Positions 9,025-54,010 of a stretch of 64,000 nucleotides of DNA are shown piece by piece. Below the pieces are notes generated by a model. That model was not told the origin of the DNA and searched no databases. It saw only the letters and a program-made list of their open reading frames with translations. Location of the stretch: positions 1-64,000 of the IMG/VR virus record IMGVR_UViG_3300032236_001850, one strand, 5' to 3'. Position 1 is the first letter of the stretch. Every line of letters starts with the position of its first letter. Position numbers and translations under genes: made by a program.

Positions 9025-9040
9025 TGGATATATATATCCA
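9025..9040. promoter_or_regulatory. Palindrome TGGATATATATATCCA giving GATATATA on both strands (putative divergent late promoter)
   Basis: Perfect 16-bp palindrome between divergent genes starting at 9003 (-) and 9061 (+). Confidence 0.75.
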
Positions 9041-44614: not shown

Positions 44615-45145
44615 ATGAAAAAACTTTTATTTATCGCAATTGCTTTAATCGCAATGCAAACGAGCTTTGCTCAAACATTTTCTAAAGGTGATACTTTTGT
44701 AGAGGGCACCGTTAAATTCGTATCTTCAAATGATACAAAAACTTTCGACTTCAATCCAACTGTTGGTCATTTTGTGACAGACAAAGTTGCTGTTGGGATT
44801 TCTGTTAACACAGAAAACACAAAAACTGCAGGTGTAACTACAACTGACTCTTTTGGTTTTGGTGTATTTGCTAGATGCTACTTTTTAAGAATTGGTGAGC
44901 ATTTCAACGTTCATTCGCAATTAGGCGTGAATAGTGATAAAGCAGGTGATACAAAAACTTTAAGTGCTAATTTAGGTTTAGGTGCTAACTATTTTGTTAC
45001 CAAAAACTTATCTTTAACTTTATCTGTTGCAGACTTAGCTTCTTTCAAATCTGTTAAAGATGGAGATAGCACAACTACTATTGGATTCAGTGGGGTTACA
45101 AATCCATTCGCAACACCTACATTTGGTGTGAACTACAGATTCTAA
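44615..45145 (+). CDS. Outer-membrane beta-barrel protein (Bacteroidetes type)
   Basis: Signal peptide ..SFAQ; alternating beta-strands; terminal FGVNYRF. Confidence 0.8.
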   Translation: MKKLLFIAIALIAMQTSFAQTFSKGDTFVEGTVKFVSSNDTKTFDFNPTVGHFVTDKVAVGISVNTENTKTAGVTTTDSFGFGVFARCYFLRIGEHFNVHSQLGVNSDKAGDTKTLSANLGLGANYFVTKNLSLTLSVADLASFKSVKDGDSTTTIGFSGVTNPFATPTFGVNYRF

Positions 45146-45163: not shown

Positions 45164-45194
45164 AAAAAGGACCAGTACACTGGTCCTTTTTTTT
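45164..45194 (+). terminator. Intrinsic terminator
   Basis: AAAAAGGACCAG-TACA-CTGGTCCTTTTTTTT. Confidence 0.9.
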
Positions 45195-47612: not shown

Positions 47613-47636
47613 GTTCGAATATTTTTCATATATTTG
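47605..47636 (+). promoter_or_regulatory. Conserved 32-bp promoter (copy 7)
   Basis: TTTTTTTTGTTCG-N11-TATATTTG. Confidence 0.85.
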
Positions 47637-49513: not shown

Positions 49514-49992
49514 AAATGAATCCACTGGTAGTTGCAGCATTCCCTGGATCTGGGAAATCCTATTATAGTGAAGAATTGGATCAGTCCGGATCTTCAGTAT
49601 CAGTTGAGGTTTCTGATCTGCTATTAAAATATTACAGCTTCAATACAGAAAGAGTTAATTTAGAAATTAGTGAGATCTACCAGAAATATTCATTATTTAT
49701 AGATGAGAAAATAAATGATGGCTACTCTATAATTTTTATCCCTGCATTCTATGATGATGTATTGGAACTGATGAGATTCGAAAAGTACCGGATCGTTTTA
49801 GTTTACCCGAAACAGGATCTCCTTAATGAGTACCTGACAAGATACAAATCCCGAGGAAGTGACGGGATCTATATAGAAAAGATCTCGAGAGAATGGAACG
49901 ATTCCCTTGATAAATTAAAATCAATAGCTGGATGCAGACATATAGAGTTGAATAGCATGCAATACATATCGGATATAATAAAAGATCTTTAA
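49510..49992 (+). CDS. P-loop kinase-like protein
   Basis: VVAAFPGSGKS. Confidence 0.7.
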   Translation: MKMNPLVVAAFPGSGKSYYSEELDQSGSSVSVEVSDLLLKYYSFNTERVNLEISEIYQKYSLFIDEKINDGYSIIFIPAFYDDVLELMRFEKYRIVLVYPKQDLLNEYLTRYKSRGSDGIYIEKISREWNDSLDKLKSIAGCRHIELNSMQYISDIIKDL

Positions 49993-49994
49993 AA

Positions 49995-50912
49995 ATGAAA
50001 AGAAATCTAAAAAAAATAATCATGAACTCAGATCTCCCAATGACCAGCGGTCCGTTACTCAGATTTGATCAGGAGACAGCTGATAAGATAACAGAGAGTG
50101 GGAAAGAAACCATCAGGGAAGCCATCAAGGTTGTCAGTGCAGGAATATATGGGGAGGTAGGAGACAAATCAGATTTTAAGAAGATGCTGGAGTCATGGAA
50201 CCCAGTTGATTCGCTTGGATCCGGAGAGCCAGAGCAATTAACACAGGAGGAGATCGACGAGAGACAGGCTTATATAGACGACACCAAAAATGGATACTCT
50301 GAAGCTGCCGTTCATAAGATACTCAAGGATCTAAAGATTGACGAACCTGTTCTCAATATCTATAGATACGGAAGCCGAATCTATGGAACTGCTGATCAGA
50401 ATTCAGATCACGATTACATCATAGTTACCAGAGGAGCTATGCTTAAGAGTGGTGCTTTTAAACAGAATGCCATCTCCAGCGAAAACCGTAACATCCAAGG
50501 AATCCTTTATTCCAGAAGCGGATTTACGGATGCTATCAACAACTACGATATTAGTGCATTGGAATGCCTATCATTACATCCTGATGATGTGGTTAAAAGC
50601 ACTTGGCCTTTCAAGGTTCAAAAATGGGACAATAAGGTGATGACAAAAAAGATCATCTCGAAAGTTTCAGCATCCTGGCACACTGCTGACATGCAGGCTA
50701 AAGATGGATTCAAAGATCGTGCTAAGAAGGGTATTTTTCATGCACTTAGAATTCTGCACTTTGCATTACAGTTGAAGGAGAATCAGAAGATTGATGACTT
50801 TGGATGTGTTAACTATATCTGGGAGGATTTTAAATTGATTCCAGATGAGGAGTTTGATACCAGAGACTATATCAAGGAGAGGGATGAACTAATGGAAGAA
50901 TTAAGATCATGA
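49995..50912 (+). CDS. Pol-beta-superfamily nucleotidyltransferase with helical C-terminal domain
   Basis: YGSRIYGTADQNSDHD (GS..DxD). Confidence 0.8.
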   Translation: MKRNLKKIIMNSDLPMTSGPLLRFDQETADKITESGKETIREAIKVVSAGIYGEVGDKSDFKKMLESWNPVDSLGSGEPEQLTQEEIDERQAYIDDTKNGYSEAAVHKILKDLKIDEPVLNIYRYGSRIYGTADQNSDHDYIIVTRGAMLKSGAFKQNAISSENRNIQGILYSRSGFTDAINNYDISALECLSLHPDDVVKSTWPFKVQKWDNKVMTKKIISKVSASWHTADMQAKDGFKDRAKKGIFHALRILHFALQLKENQKIDDFGCVNYIWEDFKLIPDEEFDTRDYIKERDELMEELRS

Positions 50913-51145
50913 TAAAAATAGACGAGAAGAAACTTGACAGATATTACCAGGAATACCTAAATAGTATTGCGGAAAATCCAGAGATTAGTCACAATCTAAA
51001 GAGTCTTGCACCAGTAAATTGGTATAGTACTAGTTTGGTATCGTGTGTCTTTGCATCTATATTGGAAAGTAATTTTCACGACATAGCAACACTCGAAGAA
51101 GTTAAATTTGAAAAATTAGGAAATGAAAATAAAAGCGATTTATAA
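50909..51145 (+). CDS. Hypothetical protein
   Basis: Overlapping gene train. Confidence 0.6.
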   Translation: MIKIDEKKLDRYYQEYLNSIAENPEISHNLKSLAPVNWYSTSLVSCVFASILESNFHDIATLEEVKFEKLGNENKSDL

Positions 51146-51374
51146 AAGAAATTTGAAGATGCCGGAGGGCAAGGTGGCTTCACAAGTTGCACATGCTGTT
51201 AAGAATCTTGGGATCACTCCGATTGATTCGATTATAGTGGTTCTTTGTGTTTCGGATAAGAAGTTTGAAGAGCTTGTTGCGGAACACCCAAATTGCTATG
51301 TACAAACGGATCTAGGTTTAACCTGCGTTGAAAGTGGTACACGTACTGCTGCAGCATGGATAGAGGAGGAATAA
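51123..51374 (+). CDS. pth2: Peptidyl-tRNA hydrolase, Pth2 family (minimal)
   Basis: LKMPEGKVASQVAHA and QTDLGLT.VESGTRTA match Pth2 GK.AAQ..HA and D.G.T...GT.T. Confidence 0.8.
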   Translation: MKIKAIYKRNLKMPEGKVASQVAHAVKNLGITPIDSIIVVLCVSDKKFEELVAEHPNCYVQTDLGLTCVESGTRTAAAWIEEE

Positions 51375-51820
51375 TGGTAAACAAAGTCAACATAAACAAC
51401 AGGAAAGCAAAGTTCGATTTCGAGTTCATTAGAACTCTAACTGCTGGTATGCAGCTGATGGGATCGGAAGTAAAGGCTATCCGAGATGGCAGAGTTTCCT
51501 TTGTGGATTCCTACTGTTACTTCAACGGCAAAGAACTTTTTCTAAAGAATCTAAATATAACTCCAATATCATCTACATATTCTCACGAACCCAACAGGGA
51601 GAGAAGGTTGCTTCTTAATAGAAGTGAACTTAGAAAACTTCAGAATGATATGGACAGAGGAATGACTATAGTTCCTTTTAGAATTTTTACAAATGAGAAG
51701 GGCTTGATCAAACTAGATATCGCACTTGCTAAGGGAAAGAAGAGTTACGACAAAAAAGAAAAAATAAAGGAGGCAGATATAAAAAGGGATACTAAAAGAT
51801 TCATTGCTGGAGATATATAG
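51374..51820 (+). CDS. smpB: SsrA-binding protein
   Basis: NRKAKFDF, AGMQLMGSEVKAIR, RERRLLLNRSE, IALAKGKK..DKK; TAATG-coupled to pth2. Confidence 0.95.
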   Translation: MVNKVNINNRKAKFDFEFIRTLTAGMQLMGSEVKAIRDGRVSFVDSYCYFNGKELFLKNLNITPISSTYSHEPNRERRLLLNRSELRKLQNDMDRGMTIVPFRIFTNEKGLIKLDIALAKGKKSYDKKEKIKEADIKRDTKRFIAGDI

Positions 51821-51838
51821 GTATAAAATCATACCTAT
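51812..51838 (+). promoter_or_regulatory. GATATATA motif plus initiation-region hairpin upstream of homing endonuclease
   Basis: GATATATA at 51812-51819; hairpin ATAGGTAT-AAAATC-ATACCTAT (51817-51838) ending 1 nt before ATG 51840. Confidence 0.7.
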
Positions 51839-51839
51839 T

Positions 51840-52874
51840 ATGAGACACAGTAAAAAATATCTGATTAATTATTTAATAGAAAATTATAACAAAAAAAGTA
51901 AATCCGAGATAATTAGTGAACTCGACCTTTCGTGGACATATCTGCAAAAAATAGCATCTTTAAATGGTATAAAAAGAGAATTTTGTGAAAATAAAAACGG
52001 AGGTAAATATTCAATATTAACAAATTATGATAATATTATAAGTTGTTATTGGTTAGGATTTATGTTAGCTGATGGTAATATAAGCAAAAAAAATAATATG
52101 ATGCTCAATTTAGCAATATGTGATAAAGATCATATACTCAAAATAGAAACTCATGTTGGAAAAACCTGCGTGTATTATAAAAAAGACAATATAATAACAA
52201 TTGTTTTGAATGATTCTGTTACATTTAAAAAAATAGCATCAGATTTCAATTGGAAAACTAATAAAACAAAAAACCCACCCGTTCTACCGGGATCAATGAG
52301 CCCTGATTGTATATTTTCAATGATCATCGGATTCATTGATGGTGATGGATGTATTGATGAAAGGTATGGACTGAAAGTTAAATGTGATGGATCGTGGCAA
52401 GACATGCTTAACTATTTCCATTTAATATTAACAGGTAATTCTAAAAAATATCAAATTAACAATAATGGTTATTCGGTATTTCGAGTGGGTGACATGGTTA
52501 AACTAAAGGATATAAAGAAAAAAATTTTAGACCTTGGTATTCCAGCTATGGATAGGAAGTGGGATAAAATAGATATTAATAGGATATACAAATCGGAGAA
52601 AAAATCTATTATTTCGGAGATGCTAAATAACGGGGATAACATGGAGTCGATATTAGAAAAAACAGGATTTAGCAAAACGTTATATTATTCAGTTGCAAAC
52701 AAGGAAGGAATAAATGTAAGAAAAAATAAAATATCCGATAATCAATCCGCATCGATAGTAACAATGTATAATAACGGAATTACTACCAGGGAGATATCTA
52801 GCTCACTCAAATTAAGTATATCAACAATACACAGACACATTAAAAAATACAAAGAAGCTAAAAGAAGTTTATAA
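51840..52874 (+). mobile_element. Free-standing double-motif LAGLIDADG homing endonuclease with C-terminal HTH-like region
   Basis: YWLGFMLADGNI and MIIGFIDGDGCI; HTH-like ITTREISSSLKLSISTIHRHI; more AT-rich than neighbours. Confidence 0.85.
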
Positions 52875-53341
52875 TGGAAAGAGTAGAAATGCGTGACAAA
52901 TCGCACAGGTCGATTGTACAGAAACAAGAAACACCACAATCGGAAAAGCAGAAGGTTAAAACAGAAAAGAAAATCAAATATGATCAGAATCTTAAGAATT
53001 CGATCATGAAAATGTTTAAGGATAGTAGATACTGTTCCATGATGATTAGCTATTCGTATAGATACTCTGATGAGATTGTGATTGAAGACGTGAAAGCAAC
53101 AATTCTGAAGGATGACTATGATGCCTTTATCAAGGAGATAAAGGCATGTAATTTTGATAAGACATCAACATTATCGGTTATCAACAAATATTCACCAGTA
53201 AACAGGGAGAATAGATCAACAGGATCAACAAATATCGGTTGGGTGACACCAATAGAAAGATTAGGTCCATCGTCGGGTTTAATAAAGATTGGTAAGTCTT
53301 CTAGAAATCAAGATGACGATGCATTTAATAAATTTTTCTAA
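52874..53341 (+). CDS. Hypothetical protein
   Basis: TAATG-coupled. Confidence 0.7.
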   Translation: MERVEMRDKSHRSIVQKQETPQSEKQKVKTEKKIKYDQNLKNSIMKMFKDSRYCSMMISYSYRYSDEIVIEDVKATILKDDYDAFIKEIKACNFDKTSTLSVINKYSPVNRENRSTGSTNIGWVTPIERLGPSSGLIKIGKSSRNQDDDAFNKFF

Positions 53342-53613
53342 TGAAAGAAGGAATAGTTTTAATAGCGATCCCCATATTGGTCCTAGGACTCATTATAGCT
53401 CTCCATACGAAGTCCGATAAGTATGTGGGTACTGTAGTAAAGGTTAGCTCGTGGGATGGAGCAGCGAGCTTAAAAACAAAGAATAAGAGAGGTCAAGACA
53501 CCATCATTGAGGTTAAGCCTCGAAGATTTGAAAGATTCACCGAGGGGCAGGTAATTACAGCTTGGATTGGTGGAGATTTAATAGGAGACATAGCAACAAC
53601 AAATCCACAATAA
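53341..53613 (+). CDS. Membrane-anchored OB-like protein
   Basis: N-terminal TM helix then beta-strands. Confidence 0.65.
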   Translation: MKEGIVLIAIPILVLGLIIALHTKSDKYVGTVVKVSSWDGAASLKTKNKRGQDTIIEVKPRRFERFTEGQVITAWIGGDLIGDIATTNPQ

Positions 53614-53614
53614 T

Positions 53615-53782
53615 ATGACAGTAAAACATCTAATCAAAATTCTAGAAAAAATTGACGGTGATAAAATAGTCGTCATAACAGATCCCGATGGGATATCTTG
53701 GACCAATGTCGGTGATGTGGTTGAGGAAAAGTGTGAGGTAAAGATAATAGAGGATGGTGATGATCCTTTCCATGATAGCTAA
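53615..53782 (+). CDS. 55-aa protein (not in ORF track)
   Basis: MTVKHLIKILEKIDGDKIVVITDPDG... fills the gap exactly. Confidence 0.65.
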   Translation: MTVKHLIKILEKIDGDKIVVITDPDGISWTNVGDVVEEKCEVKIIEDGDDPFHDS

Positions 53783-53783
53783 T

Positions 53784-53999
53784 ATGAAGTATTACTTTAT
53801 AACATATCAGGCAACTAGCAGTTCAGGTTCAATTTCCAAATGGAATCAGGTTATCTGCACATCTCCCATGGAGTTCATAAAGAAAGTCGAGAAAGCGGAG
53901 GATCATGGAACTCCATTTAGAAGATATTTCGGATTCGTTGTCATCAACACATGTGAAATATCTGAGGATGACTACAATAAGTATAAAGATCAATTTTAA
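53784..53999 (+). CDS. Hypothetical protein
   Basis: Start at MKYYFITY. Confidence 0.65.
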   Translation: MKYYFITYQATSSSGSISKWNQVICTSPMEFIKKVEKAEDHGTPFRRYFGFVVINTCEISEDDYNKYKDQF

Positions 54000-54010
54000 A
54001 AACAATTATA

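What the first reader, a model, noticed from the sequence alone, without database searches (positions are those of the whole stretch)
51812..52874. Homing endonuclease with T4 I-TevI-style control written into the end of smpB
Seen: the last codons of smpB (GGA GAT ATA TAG) contain GATATATA. It overlaps an 8-bp hairpin (51817-51838) ending one base before the LAGLIDADG ATG (51840). Known: T4 intron endonucleases are silenced on early read-through transcripts by a hairpin over the initiation region and expressed from a late promoter whose transcript lacks the 5' arm. Inference: the same logic here. This independently supports GATATATA as a late promoter; the cut site may lie in or near smpB of endonuclease-free relatives.
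Basis: partly seen in the sequence, partly recalled or inferred. Interest (0 to 1): 0.62.

Follow-up and report, generated by a model that had tools for sequence, protein, structure and literature searches.

The report
Mobile endonuclease cassette rewriting phage smpB's end
A 1,066-bp selfish DNA-cutting-enzyme gene sits inside the last codons of the smpB gene of a 434-kb phage, and it brings its own late promoter and an RNA hairpin over its start codon, the layout that phage T4 uses to delay such enzymes; this is a new example of a known strategy, not a new kind of system.

Summary
smpB ends GGA GAT ATA TAG. GATATATA is at 51812-51819. An 8-bp hairpin (51817-24/51831-38) ends one base before the ATG at 51840. 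The 344-aa ORF is a double-motif LAGLIDADG endonuclease with extra HTH domains.

GATATATA is a real -10-only promoter. There are 92 copies, and 70 lie within 50 nt upstream of an ORF start. An A lies 5 nt downstream in 69 of 92. It heads sheath, portal, protease and endolysin genes, and the genome encodes a gp55-like late sigma.

They belong to a 1,066-bp cassette (51800-52865, flanked by the 8-nt repeat CTAAAAGA) inserted 6 nt before the old smpB stop. Close relatives and two pond metagenomes hold the exact empty site.

The cassette is mobile. Its distribution is sporadic, dN/dS is about 0.1, and a 95-100% identical block sits in diverged flanks.

Homologs as distant as about 30% identity also sit directly after phage smpB. 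In about half the lineages a promoter-like box forms the 5' arm of a hairpin reaching the ATG, with different sequences.

Timing, transcription start and cleavage are untested, and no RNA data exist.

The parts
51374..51820 (+). smpB coding sequence (148 aa). 51374-51799 is native; the last seven codons, 51800-51820 (TTC ATT GCT GGA GAT ATA TAG = FIAGDI*), are supplied by the inserted cassette.
   Evidence: Pfam SmpB E 7.7e-47. Endonuclease-free alleles end ..DTKR SI* or NM*.
51792..51799 (+). Left copy of the 8-nt direct repeat CTAAAAGA that bounds the insert.
   Evidence: Sequence. Read laying joint 51791->52858 with 8 letters fitting both sides.
51800..52865 (+). The 1,066-bp mobile cassette (equally 51792-52857). 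It holds the new smpB tail and stop, the late promoter, the hairpin and the endonuclease ORF.
   Evidence: Absent from L005 and L006. Skipped exactly in pond-metagenome contigs X2 and X3. A 95-100% identity block sits in diverged flanks between L007 and L001.
51812..51819 (+). GATATATA, a late (-10-only, gp55-type) promoter box. The predicted transcription start is 51823-51825.
   Evidence: Genome-wide placement, the +1 A, absence of a -35 and late genes downstream. gp55-like sigma at genome 281665-282024.
51817..51838 (+). RNA hairpin: 5' arm 51817-24 (overlaps the TAG stop and the end of the promoter), loop 51825-30, 3' arm 51831-38. Extended pairing of 51814-17 with 51839-42 covers the AUG.
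   Evidence: Equivalent hairpins in relatives.
51840..52874 (+). Free-standing LAGLIDADG homing endonuclease gene (344 aa): N-terminal helical domain, double LAGLIDADG core and two C-terminal HTH modules.
   Evidence: dN/dS 0.07-0.15.
52047..52076 (+). LAGLIDADG motif 1 (YWLGFMLADG, residues 70-79; D78 invariant).
   Evidence: Alignment A4.
52320..52349 (+). LAGLIDADG motif 2 (MIIGFIDGDG, residues 161-170; D167 and D169 invariant).
   Evidence: Alignment A4.
52725..52868 (+). C-terminal helix-turn-helix module (residues about 296-343). It is present only in this clade and a few others.
   Evidence: Pfam HTH_24 3.4e-6 and HTH_7. Alignment A4. Model helices.
52858..52865 (+). Right copy of the 8-nt direct repeat CTAAAAGA.
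52866..52876 (+). Displaced original smpB tail (AGT TTA TAA). It is now read in its old phase as the endonuclease's last two codons and stop. The old TAATG overlap with the start of the next gene (ATG 52874) is kept.
   Evidence: Alignment A3 against L005 and L006. Relics of the smpB tail at the C-termini of distant homologs (P0007 ..IKRN, P0034 ..IDRDSKRSLNY).
47629..47636 (+). TATATTTG box of the nearest upstream early-type promoter, the probable start of the polycistronic unit that runs through smpB into the endonuclease gene.
   Evidence: No terminator-like site lies between it and 51840 except a weak one at 49775.

Best explanation
The locus is a free-standing LAGLIDADG homing-endonuclease cassette of 1,066 bp. 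It is inserted six nucleotides before the original stop codon of the smpB gene of a 434-kb, distantly T4-like phage. The phage's promoters suggest a Bacteroidota host.

The cassette replaces the last two smpB codons with its own short tail (FIAGDI*). That tail carries the phage's late promoter box GATATATA, which is probably read by the phage's gp55-like sigma factor.

The endonuclease ORF ends by reading the displaced smpB tail in its old frame. It reuses the old stop codon and the overlap with the next gene's start.

Transcripts that start at the early promoter about 4 kb upstream run through smpB. They contain both arms of a hairpin that pairs the region up to and including the AUG. In a genome where only 6% of genes have a Shine-Dalgarno sequence, this pairing should depress initiation.

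Transcripts that start at the late promoter begin about 5 nt after the box, at the end of the 5' arm. They cannot form the hairpin, so the enzyme is made late. This is the same logic as T4 I-TevI, segB and Aeh1 mobE.

The enzyme presumably cuts endonuclease-free smpB alleles at ..ACTAAAAGA|AGTWTATAATGG.. during co-infection. Repair then copies the cassette in, together with about 100 nt of flanking smpB.

Shown: identity of the genes, the exact insert and empty site, mobility, the promoter class, and presence and conservation of the hairpin.

Inferred: the transcription start, the timing, translational silencing and the cleavage site.
For: Gene identities.

Exact insert and empty site: L005 and L006 lack the endonuclease, and their smpB stop overlaps the next gene's ATG. 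Contigs from two pond metagenomes (different studies), about 95% identical in the flanks, skip exactly 1,066 bp (51791->52858) with 8 shared letters.

Mobility: only 1 of the 80 closest phage smpB loci carries the gene. dN/dS is 0.07-0.15. Between L007 and L001 the endonuclease dS is 0.13 while smpB dS is 1.6. A 95-100% identity block runs from about -100 to the end of the ORF, in flanks that are 72-85% identical or unalignable.

Target specificity: every homolog of 40% identity or more, and several at 30-39%, lies directly after a phage smpB in otherwise different neighbourhoods.

Promoter: 70 of 92 GATATATA copies lie within 50 nt upstream of ORF starts, at 4-6 nt (17 copies) or 13-29 nt (50 copies). 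Controls score 1/57, 1/29 and 1/24. An A lies 5 nt downstream in 69 of 92 copies. There is no -35 signal. The box heads tail sheath (4e-118), portal (3.5e-55), head protease (1.2e-39) and endolysin (1.4e-67) genes. A gp55-like sigma is encoded (phrog_234 at 2e-15; T4 gp55 by phmmer at 1.2e-6), as is a T4-type Gp23 capsid protein. This is the only copy of the box in the + strand block between 34.9 and 73 kb.

The box follows the resident genome. In a 476-kb relative, the box used 4-5 or 19-24 nt before 15 of 18 ORFs is AATATATAAG, and that version stands at its smpB/endonuclease junction.

Hairpin: it is in the top 0.7% of start-region stabilities in this genome. Among late leaders it is matched only by 405133 (-8.0 kcal/mol), whose hairpin does not touch the promoter or the ATG. 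In the 476-kb relative it is the only strongly folded leader of 15 (-8.6 against 0 to -3.7 kcal/mol).

Of 26 distinct junctions, 12 fold at or below the 5% tail of 935 background ORF starts. The sequences and registers differ. Examples are L029 GATACATAGTA/TACTATGTATT at -11.1, L040 at -10.3, L227 at -10.6 and L042 at -11.1 kcal/mol.

In each case examined (the window clade, L029 and L030) the 5' arm ends at the predicted +1.

G.U pairs make the sense strand far more stable than the antisense strand in the L030-L040 clade. This points to RNA rather than a DNA palindrome.

Early unit: a conserved TATATTTG promoter lies at 47629, with no convincing terminator before 51840.

Precedent in T4: PMC2988022.
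Against: No transcript data exist: all runs that hold this DNA are DNA runs. The start site, the timing and the silencing therefore remain inferences.

The hairpin is modest (-7.5 kcal/mol; p = 0.06 against shuffles of the junction alone). It is weakened without compensation in close relatives: L001 has TAG->TAA, giving an A.C mismatch and -2.0 kcal/mol; L002 folds at -4.1. It is absent or weak in L035/37, L046, L053, L063 and L069.

TATATA-type boxes are self-complementary. An AT-rich leader will therefore pair with them more easily than with random sequence.

The smpB stop codon lies inside the 5' arm. Every ribosome that finishes SmpB must melt the hairpin 20 nt before the AUG, so silencing on translated early mRNA may be leaky or may turn into coupling.

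The predicted late leader of this window still forms a weak 5-bp pairing over the AUG (-2.1 kcal/mol).

Position +5 after the box is T here, not the usual A, although A stands on either side.

Cleavage of the empty site is untested.
Confidence: 0.6

Rival explanations
1. Ribosome-gated coupling rather than silencing. The smpB stop codon lies in the 5' arm and the AUG lies 19 nt downstream. The hairpin therefore keeps free ribosomes off the endonuclease start. Each ribosome that terminates on smpB opens it and may re-initiate. The enzyme would then be made early at a low level tied to SmpB synthesis, and the late promoter would add a second, independent supply.
For: The stop codon lies within the 5' arm and the stop-to-ATG gap is 18-20 nt in the window clade, L029, L030/31, L039, L040, L221 and L226. 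Overlapping stop/start junctions (TAATG, ATGA) are the rule in this operon.
Against: In L035/37, L042, L095, L227 and L283 the gap is 28-40 nt. The hairpin there lies wholly beyond a terminating ribosome's reach, yet the promoter-arm/ATG-arm layout is kept. Coupling does not explain why the 5' arm always coincides with the promoter box and ends at the predicted +1.
Confidence: 0.2
2. The inverted repeat is a DNA operator. The endonuclease, through its HTH modules or its pseudo-symmetric nuclease core, binds the palindrome over its own late promoter and represses it, as I-TevI does at its operator.
For: In this window the repeat is a perfect 8+6+8 palindrome of LAGLIDADG-site size and overlaps the promoter. 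The antisense strand folds as well as the sense strand here. The protein carries extra HTH domains. I-TevI autorepression is documented (PMC2988022).
Against: The promoter region shows no similarity to the empty site beyond chance: best 11 of 20, reached by 493 of 500 shuffles. In the L030-L040 clade the pairing depends on G.U pairs, and the antisense strand hardly folds (-8.8 against -0.6; -10.3 against -2.5). That is not expected of a DNA palindrome. The second HTH module is missing from most family members, which still have the hairpin.
Confidence: 0.1
3. The hairpin is a by-product without regulatory function. A self-complementary TATATA box next to an AT-rich leader pairs by chance. The cassette is simply a late-transcribed selfish gene.
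For: p is only 0.06 for this junction against its own shuffles. There are uncompensated losses in L001 and L002, and weak folds in about half of the lineages.
Against: Other leaders driven by the same self-complementary box rarely fold. In this genome 63 of 70 fold weaker than -2.8 kcal/mol, and in the relative 14 of 15 fold at -3.7 or weaker. Twelve of 26 distinct junctions lie in the 5% tail of the background, against 1.3 expected. Arms change together between clades, for example stop TAG with CTA against stop TAA with TTA.
Confidence: 0.1

Closest known systems
T4 I-TevI (also I-TevII and I-TevIII): intron-encoded endonucleases with a late or middle promoter inside an early transcription unit, and a hairpin that forms only on the longer transcripts (PMC2988022)
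   Same: A selfish endonuclease gene sits inside an early polycistronic unit. A -10-only late promoter lies immediately upstream. The promoter overlaps the 5' arm, so late transcripts lack the inhibitory structure. A gp55-type sigma is encoded by the phage.
   Different: The enzyme is LAGLIDADG, not GIY-YIG or HNH. It is not in an intron (no group I or II match). The hairpin covers the AUG and its AU-rich approach rather than a Shine-Dalgarno sequence, which this genome hardly uses. No operator resembling the homing site was found. The promoter box is GATATATA, not TATAAATA.
Free-standing phage endonucleases with the same control: T4 segB and Aeromonas phage Aeh1 mobE (PMC2988022; PMC2790892)
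   Same: They are free-standing, homing without an intron, with a late promoter plus hairpin. They spread with co-conversion of flanking host-gene sequence.
   Different: Those enzymes sit between genes or split a gene into two. This cassette lies inside the last codons of its target. It supplies a substitute C-terminus and stop for that gene, and it finishes its own ORF on the displaced tail.
Monomeric double-motif LAGLIDADG homing endonucleases (I-Tsp061I, I-AniI, the I-OnuI family)
   Same: Two LAGLIDADG motifs with conserved acidic residues. The same fold (Foldseek probability 1.00; TM up to 0.64 on the target).
   Different: Sequence identity is only 10-20%. The protein has an added N-terminal helical domain and one or two C-terminal HTH modules. 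It lives in phage genomes, neither in an intron nor in an intein.
WhiA (LAGLIDADG fold plus HTH, a bacterial regulator; PDB 3hyi)
   Same: The domain combination is LAGLIDADG core plus C-terminal HTH. It was hit at rank 5.
   Different: From general knowledge, WhiA has lost the catalytic residues and is not mobile. Here both acidic residues are invariant and the gene shows presence/absence polymorphism and lateral transfer.

Membership tests
LAGLIDADG homing endonuclease (double-motif, monomeric) | Two LAGLIDADG motifs, each with the acidic residue at position 8 | tested here: met
   YWLGFMLADG (D78) and MIIGFIDGDG (D169). G73, F74, A77, D78 and G164-G170 are invariant in 22 homologs.
LAGLIDADG homing endonuclease (double-motif, monomeric) | The alpha-beta-beta-alpha-beta-beta-alpha fold, twice in one chain | tested here: met
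   Model pLDDT 91. The top PDB matches are LAGLIDADG enzymes, inteins or WhiA, with E down to 5.8e-6.
LAGLIDADG homing endonuclease (double-motif, monomeric) | Pfam family score above the gathering threshold | tested here: inconclusive
   PF14528 scores 22.2 bits against a cut-off of 22.5. PF00961 scores 17.5 against 23.1. Many homologs carry PF14528 in the precomputed table.
LAGLIDADG homing endonuclease (double-motif, monomeric) | Site-specific double-strand cleavage of a site of about 20 bp | not testable with these tools
   This needs purified protein and the empty-site substrate.
Homing (mobile) endonuclease gene | Precise presence/absence polymorphism at one site in a conserved host gene | tested here: met
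   L005 and L006 lack it. X2 and X3 contigs skip exactly 1,066 bp.
Homing (mobile) endonuclease gene | Sporadic distribution, and a history different from the flanking gene, with co-conversion of the flanks | tested here: met
   One of 80 smpB loci carries it. Between L007 and L001 the endonuclease dS is 0.13 and smpB dS is 1.6. The identity block starts about 100 nt inside smpB.
T4-type late-promoter plus hairpin control of an endonuclease gene | [quoted passage not shown] | tested here: met
   Promoter class established genome-wide. gp55-like sigma. Early TATATTTG promoter at 47629, with no convincing terminator in between. The evidence is by sequence only.
T4-type late-promoter plus hairpin control of an endonuclease gene | A structure over the initiation region that needs sequence upstream of the late start | tested here: met
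   The 5' arm at 51817-24 ends at the predicted +1 (51823-25). The AUG is paired in the long form. The layout is conserved in many lineages.
T4-type late-promoter plus hairpin control of an endonuclease gene | A mapped late 5' end, and protein made only late | not testable with these tools
   No RNA run holds this DNA.
Group I/II intron-encoded or intein-encoded endonuclease | A ribozyme core around the ORF, or an in-frame protein insertion | tested here: not met
   No intron family matches at E up to 10 in 51300-53400. Only 40 nt of the insert are non-coding. smpB ends at a stop inside the insert, and the ORF is in another frame.

The most novel reading that the evidence does not exclude
The promoter-hairpin leader is a portable part of the homing cassette. 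It has travelled with one LAGLIDADG lineage through the smpB genes of many huge Bacteroidota-type phages, and it retunes its -10 box to each resident late sigma (GATATATA here, AATATATA in the 476-kb relative). The stop codon built into the 5' arm would make it a two-input gate. Early, the endonuclease start is opened only by ribosomes finishing SmpB. Late, it is opened by transcription from within the stem. The downstream gene's old stop/start coupling would be handed from smpB to the endonuclease. The selfish gene would thus have wired itself into the expression of both neighbours.
Probability: 0.2. Interest if true: 0.6.

Novelty: new member of a known kind. Interest (0 to 1): 0.5.

Why it matters
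The delay-by-late-promoter-and-hairpin strategy was worked out for GIY-YIG and HNH endonucleases of T-even coliphages. This locus suggests that the same strategy serves an unrelated enzyme family in very large, uncultured freshwater phages that barely use Shine-Dalgarno sequences. The logic therefore looks like a general solution for selfish nucleases living inside early operons.

The locus also gives four practical leads:
- a clean natural pair of filled and empty sites for a new LAGLIDADG specificity;
- a defined late-promoter consensus, with many leaderless late genes, and an early-promoter consensus for this phage group;
- a case where a mobile gene rewrites the C-terminus of a translation-rescue factor without destroying it;
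- evidence of recent genetic exchange between diverged megaphages.

Tried and rejected
- blastn of 51000-54000 against GenBank phages found no match.
- A sequence search of PDB gave only a marginal HTH hit. The fold search was needed.
- Group I/II intron reading: no Rfam match at E up to 10. Intein reading: rejected on frame and stop codon.
- There are no paralogs of the endonuclease in the genome (tblastn), so within-genome comparison of leaders was impossible.
- RNA evidence: all 11 runs are DNA and none is RNA, so read laying could only show DNA structure.
- Column-based covariation: the 16-sequence alignment A6 showed that the hairpins of different clades use different registers (pair-column sums of about 47, 43 and 41). 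One consensus structure cannot be counted. Per-lineage folding against shuffles and against 935 background ORF starts was used instead.
- Operator-like similarity between the empty site and the promoter region: best 11 of 20, which is chance level.
- A sigma-70 consensus scan of 40-56 kb gave fewer hits than shuffles (48 against 56). This host's promoters are of another type, found afterwards as TATATTTG.
- Complex prediction, the search of protein representatives and the protein-atlas search were not used, because no claim needed them.
Full report
**Setting.** The window is the first 64 kb of a single-contig virus record of 434,509 bp. The record has direct terminal repeats, 35% G+C and 31 tRNA genes. 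It encodes a T4-type Gp23 capsid protein (E 1.7e-41) and a portal, head protease, tail sheath and gp4-like head-closure protein. It also encodes a small region-2-only sigma factor like T4 gp55, at genome 281665-282024 (phrog_234 at 2e-15, Pfam Sigma70_r2 at 5.9e-5, and phmmer with T4 gp55 at 1.2e-6). Runs that hold this DNA come from pond and freshwater metagenomes.

**The observation.**
- smpB (51374-51820; Pfam SmpB 7.7e-47) ends GGA GAT ATA TAG.
- GATATATA is at 51812-51819.
- ATAGGTAT (51817-24) and ATACCTAT (51831-38) form an 8-bp stem around a 6-nt loop. One T follows, and then the ATG at 51840.
- RNAfold extends the stem, with one bulge, so that the AUG itself is paired.
- The ORF 51840-52874 has two LAGLIDADG motifs, each with its acidic residue. 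These are invariant in 22 homologs.
- The ORF folds with pLDDT 91 into a structure whose PDB neighbours are LAGLIDADG enzymes, inteins or WhiA.
- It carries an N-terminal helical domain and two C-terminal HTH modules.

**GATATATA is a late promoter.**
- The genome has 92 copies. Seventy lie within 50 nt upstream of an ORF start on the correct strand: 17 at 4-6 nt and 50 at 13-29 nt.
- One-letter variants show no such placement: GATATATT 1/57, GATATATG 1/29, GATATATC 1/24. T4's own TATAAATA scores 6/69.
- Nothing is conserved upstream of the box. The fifth base after it is A in 69 of 92 copies.
- With a start at that A, the 4-nt class gives leaderless mRNAs that begin with AUG.
- Genes behind the box include tail sheath, portal, head protease, an endolysin, a transglycosylase-like protein and a tail-fibre-like protein.
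- Together with the gp55-like sigma, this is the T4 type of late promoter with a different consensus.

**A second promoter class marks the early units.** A long conserved element ends in TATATTTG. About 50 copies lie 12-43 nt before ORFs. It has the form of the Bacteroidota -7 box (my own knowledge of that consensus). Only 6% of genes have a Shine-Dalgarno-like sequence.

One TATATTTG promoter lies at 47629. From there to the endonuclease gene the ORFs abut or overlap, and no convincing terminator intervenes. The GATATATA at 51812 is the only copy in the + strand block between 34.9 and 73 kb. The endonuclease gene is therefore a late-promoter island inside a probable early operon.

**What the element is.** Two close relatives lack the endonuclease: L005 from a 430-kb contig and L006. 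Their SmpB is 91-92% identical to the window's. In both, smpB ends ..GAC ACY AAA AGA followed by AGT ATA TAA (or AAC ATG TAA), and the stop overlaps the next gene's ATG as TAATG.

In the window and in relatives L001, L002, L004 and L007, homology to the empty allele stops after ..ACT AAA AGA (51799). It resumes at 52866 (AGT TTA TAATGG..). The stretch between is 1,066 bp and is bounded by the 8-nt repeat CTAAAAGA (51792-99 and 52858-65).

Contigs from two pond metagenomes of different studies are about 95% identical in the flanks. They skip exactly these 1,066 bp, with 8 letters that fit either side.

Three consequences follow:
- The last seven codons of smpB (FIAGDI*), the promoter box and the hairpin are cassette sequence, not native smpB.
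- The endonuclease ORF finishes on the displaced smpB tail in that tail's old reading phase (..KRSL*). It reuses the old stop and the old overlap with the next gene.
- Distant family members also end in relics of the smpB tail (..IKRN in P0007..IDRDSKRSLNY in P0034).

The element is neither an intron (no Rfam match, and only 40 non-coding bases) nor an intein (wrong frame, with an internal stop).

**Mobility.**
- Of the 80 phage smpB loci closest to this one, only one has the endonuclease.
- dN/dS among five copies is 0.07-0.15, so the protein is under purifying selection.
- L007 and L001 have nearly identical endonuclease genes (dS 0.13), but their smpB genes have dS 1.6.
- Identity between L007 and L001 is 72-85% across smpB. 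It rises to 90-93% over the last 100 nt of smpB and stays at 95-100% through the ORF. It then collapses, because the downstream genes differ.
- This pattern is the signature of a recent transfer with a short co-conversion tract, and the tract includes the promoter and hairpin.

**A family dedicated to smpB.** Every homolog with 40% identity or more lies directly after a phage smpB, and so do several at 30-39%. The other neighbours differ between loci (NUDIX and Gp23 in one; thioredoxin, Gad2 and sigma-70 in another). More distant homologs sit elsewhere.

**The regulatory layout is conserved.**
- In the 18-20-nt-gap clades the box overlaps the smpB stop, just as in the window. The sequences differ: L029 GATACATAG.., and L030/31/39/40 AATATATAAG...
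- In clades with longer gaps the box lies in the spacer, usually about 19-21 nt before the ATG (about 11 nt in L046).
- In the 476-kb relative (G001), AATATATAAG lies 4-5 or 19-24 nt before 15 of 18 ORFs. The junction therefore carries the resident genome's own version of the late box.
- Of 26 distinct junctions, 12 fold at or below the 5% tail of 935 background ORF starts (1.3 expected; the lineages are related, so this is not a clean probability). Examples are -11.1 kcal/mol (L029), -10.3 (L040), -10.6 (L227), -11.1 (L042), -10.0 (L283) and -8.6 to -8.8 (L007, L030/31, L221, L226).
- The arms differ in sequence and even in register between clades. In each clade examined (the window clade, L029 and L030) the 5' arm contains the box and ends at the predicted +1, while the 3' arm runs up to or into the ATG.
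- Changes are matched across arms. For example, stop TAG pairs with CTA in L029, and stop TAA pairs with TTA in L030.
- In the L030-L040 clade the stem needs G.U pairs, so the sense strand folds far better than the antisense strand. This favours an RNA structure over a DNA palindrome.
- The hairpin is specific to the endonuclease. Among 70 late leaders in this genome, only one other (405133, -8.0 kcal/mol) folds as well, and its hairpin does not involve the box or the ATG. Among 15 late leaders in G001, the endonuclease leader is the only one below -3.7 kcal/mol.

**Mechanism proposed.** The following steps are inferred.
- Early transcripts from about 47.6 kb carry both arms, so the AUG and its AU-rich approach are paired. 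In a system that relies on unstructured leaders instead of Shine-Dalgarno pairing, this should depress initiation.
- Late transcripts begin at 51823-25, in or at the end of the 5' arm, and cannot form the stem.
- This is the arrangement documented for I-TevI, I-TevII, I-TevIII, segB and Aeh1 mobE (PMC2988022).

**Weak points.**
- There are no RNA data.
- The stem is modest and scores p = 0.06 against its own shuffles.
- L001 and L002 have lost part of the stem without compensation.
- About half of the lineages fold weakly.
- The window's short leader keeps a -2.1 kcal/mol pairing over the AUG.
- The smpB stop codon lies inside the 5' arm, so terminating ribosomes must open the stem. Silencing could be leaky, or could act as coupling (rival 1).
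- An I-TevI-like operator was looked for and not found: 11 of 20 matches, which is chance level. Binding of the HTH modules to the palindrome is not excluded (rival 2).

**Comparison and novelty.** The element works like the T4 cases and meets every sequence-testable criterion for that control scheme and for a homing endonuclease gene. It differs in four ways:
- the enzyme family is LAGLIDADG, with added HTH modules;
- the target is smpB;
- it sits inside the last codons of its target, supplies a substitute tail, and ends its own ORF on the displaced one;
- it works in a Shine-Dalgarno-poor setting.

A full-text search found no paper linking smpB, homing endonucleases and phages in this way. 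I file it as a new member of a known kind.

Noticed in passing
window 34960, 36152, 40127, 47629, 56379, 57445, 58998, 62388 (+) and about 40 more sites genome-wide: A second, long conserved promoter-like element: ..ATTTTTTTATTCGAAA..(N)..TTCA TATATTTG, lying 12-43 nt before ORFs. It is probably the early class read by host polymerase, and it has the form of a Bacteroidota-type -7 box. A sub-class at about 186-195 kb has a different upstream half (..TTAACG..ATCGTTG..), perhaps a middle class.
   Followed up: partly
window 18384, 29880, 34923 and 14 further genome sites: Seventeen GATATATA boxes lie only 1-6 nt (14 of them exactly 4) before the ATG. This implies leaderless late mRNAs that begin at the A of AUG.
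   Followed up: partly
G000:C1:400049-400513 (+), locus L298: A tmRNA-like match: Rfam RF00023 at 41.4 bits (cut-off 47), E 6.7e-16. ARAGORN finds no tmRNA. The phage may carry a divergent tmRNA to go with its SmpB.
   Followed up: partly
window 49995-51374: smpB is preceded by a PTH2-like peptidyl-tRNA hydrolase fragment (83 aa, E 1.6e-5) and a nucleotidyltransferase-domain protein. Relative L001 has a PolyA_pol/CCA-adding-type gene nearby. This may be a translation-rescue gene cluster.
   Followed up: no
window 52874-53341: The gene after the cassette is 155 aa here but 85 aa in L005 and L007 (same N-terminus, MERVEMRDK), and it is absent in L001, L002 and L006. The pond contigs X2 and X3 replace 80 bp (53244->53325) with 35 other letters. 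A terminator-like hairpin (53121-53147) lies inside the ORF.
   Followed up: no
window 9027-9038: The palindrome GATATATATATC gives a box on each strand between divergent genes. This looks like a bidirectional late promoter. A similar pair lies at genome 207600/207602.
   Followed up: no
G000:C1:85414-86610 (-), locus L009: Another gene behind a GATATATA box (22 nt). It has weak matches to a PHROG annotated as homing endonuclease (2.3e-6) and to D5-like regulators. It may be a second selfish nuclease under late control, but its leader does not fold.
   Followed up: partly
G000:C1:176981-177008 and 355547-355581: Two other late leaders have a hairpin whose 5' arm lies in the promoter box and whose 3' arm ends 2-4 nt before the ATG (-7.4 and -6.5 kcal/mol). 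One heads a 124-aa protein of unknown function, the other a tail-fibre-like protein. The same switch may be used by a few phage genes, as in T4 (soc, e, 49).
   Followed up: partly
loci L139-L186 (endonuclease-free phage smpB alleles): Many endonuclease-free phage smpB genes end in an intrinsic terminator that overlaps the stop codon (..AAAAGGGACTTGAAATAGTCCCTTTTTTT). Several are followed by a TATCTTTG-type promoter box.
   Followed up: no
window 45164-45191 (+): A strong intrinsic terminator (12-bp stem followed by a T run) lies after the gene at 44615-45145. It marks a transcription-unit boundary upstream of the smpB unit.
   Followed up: no
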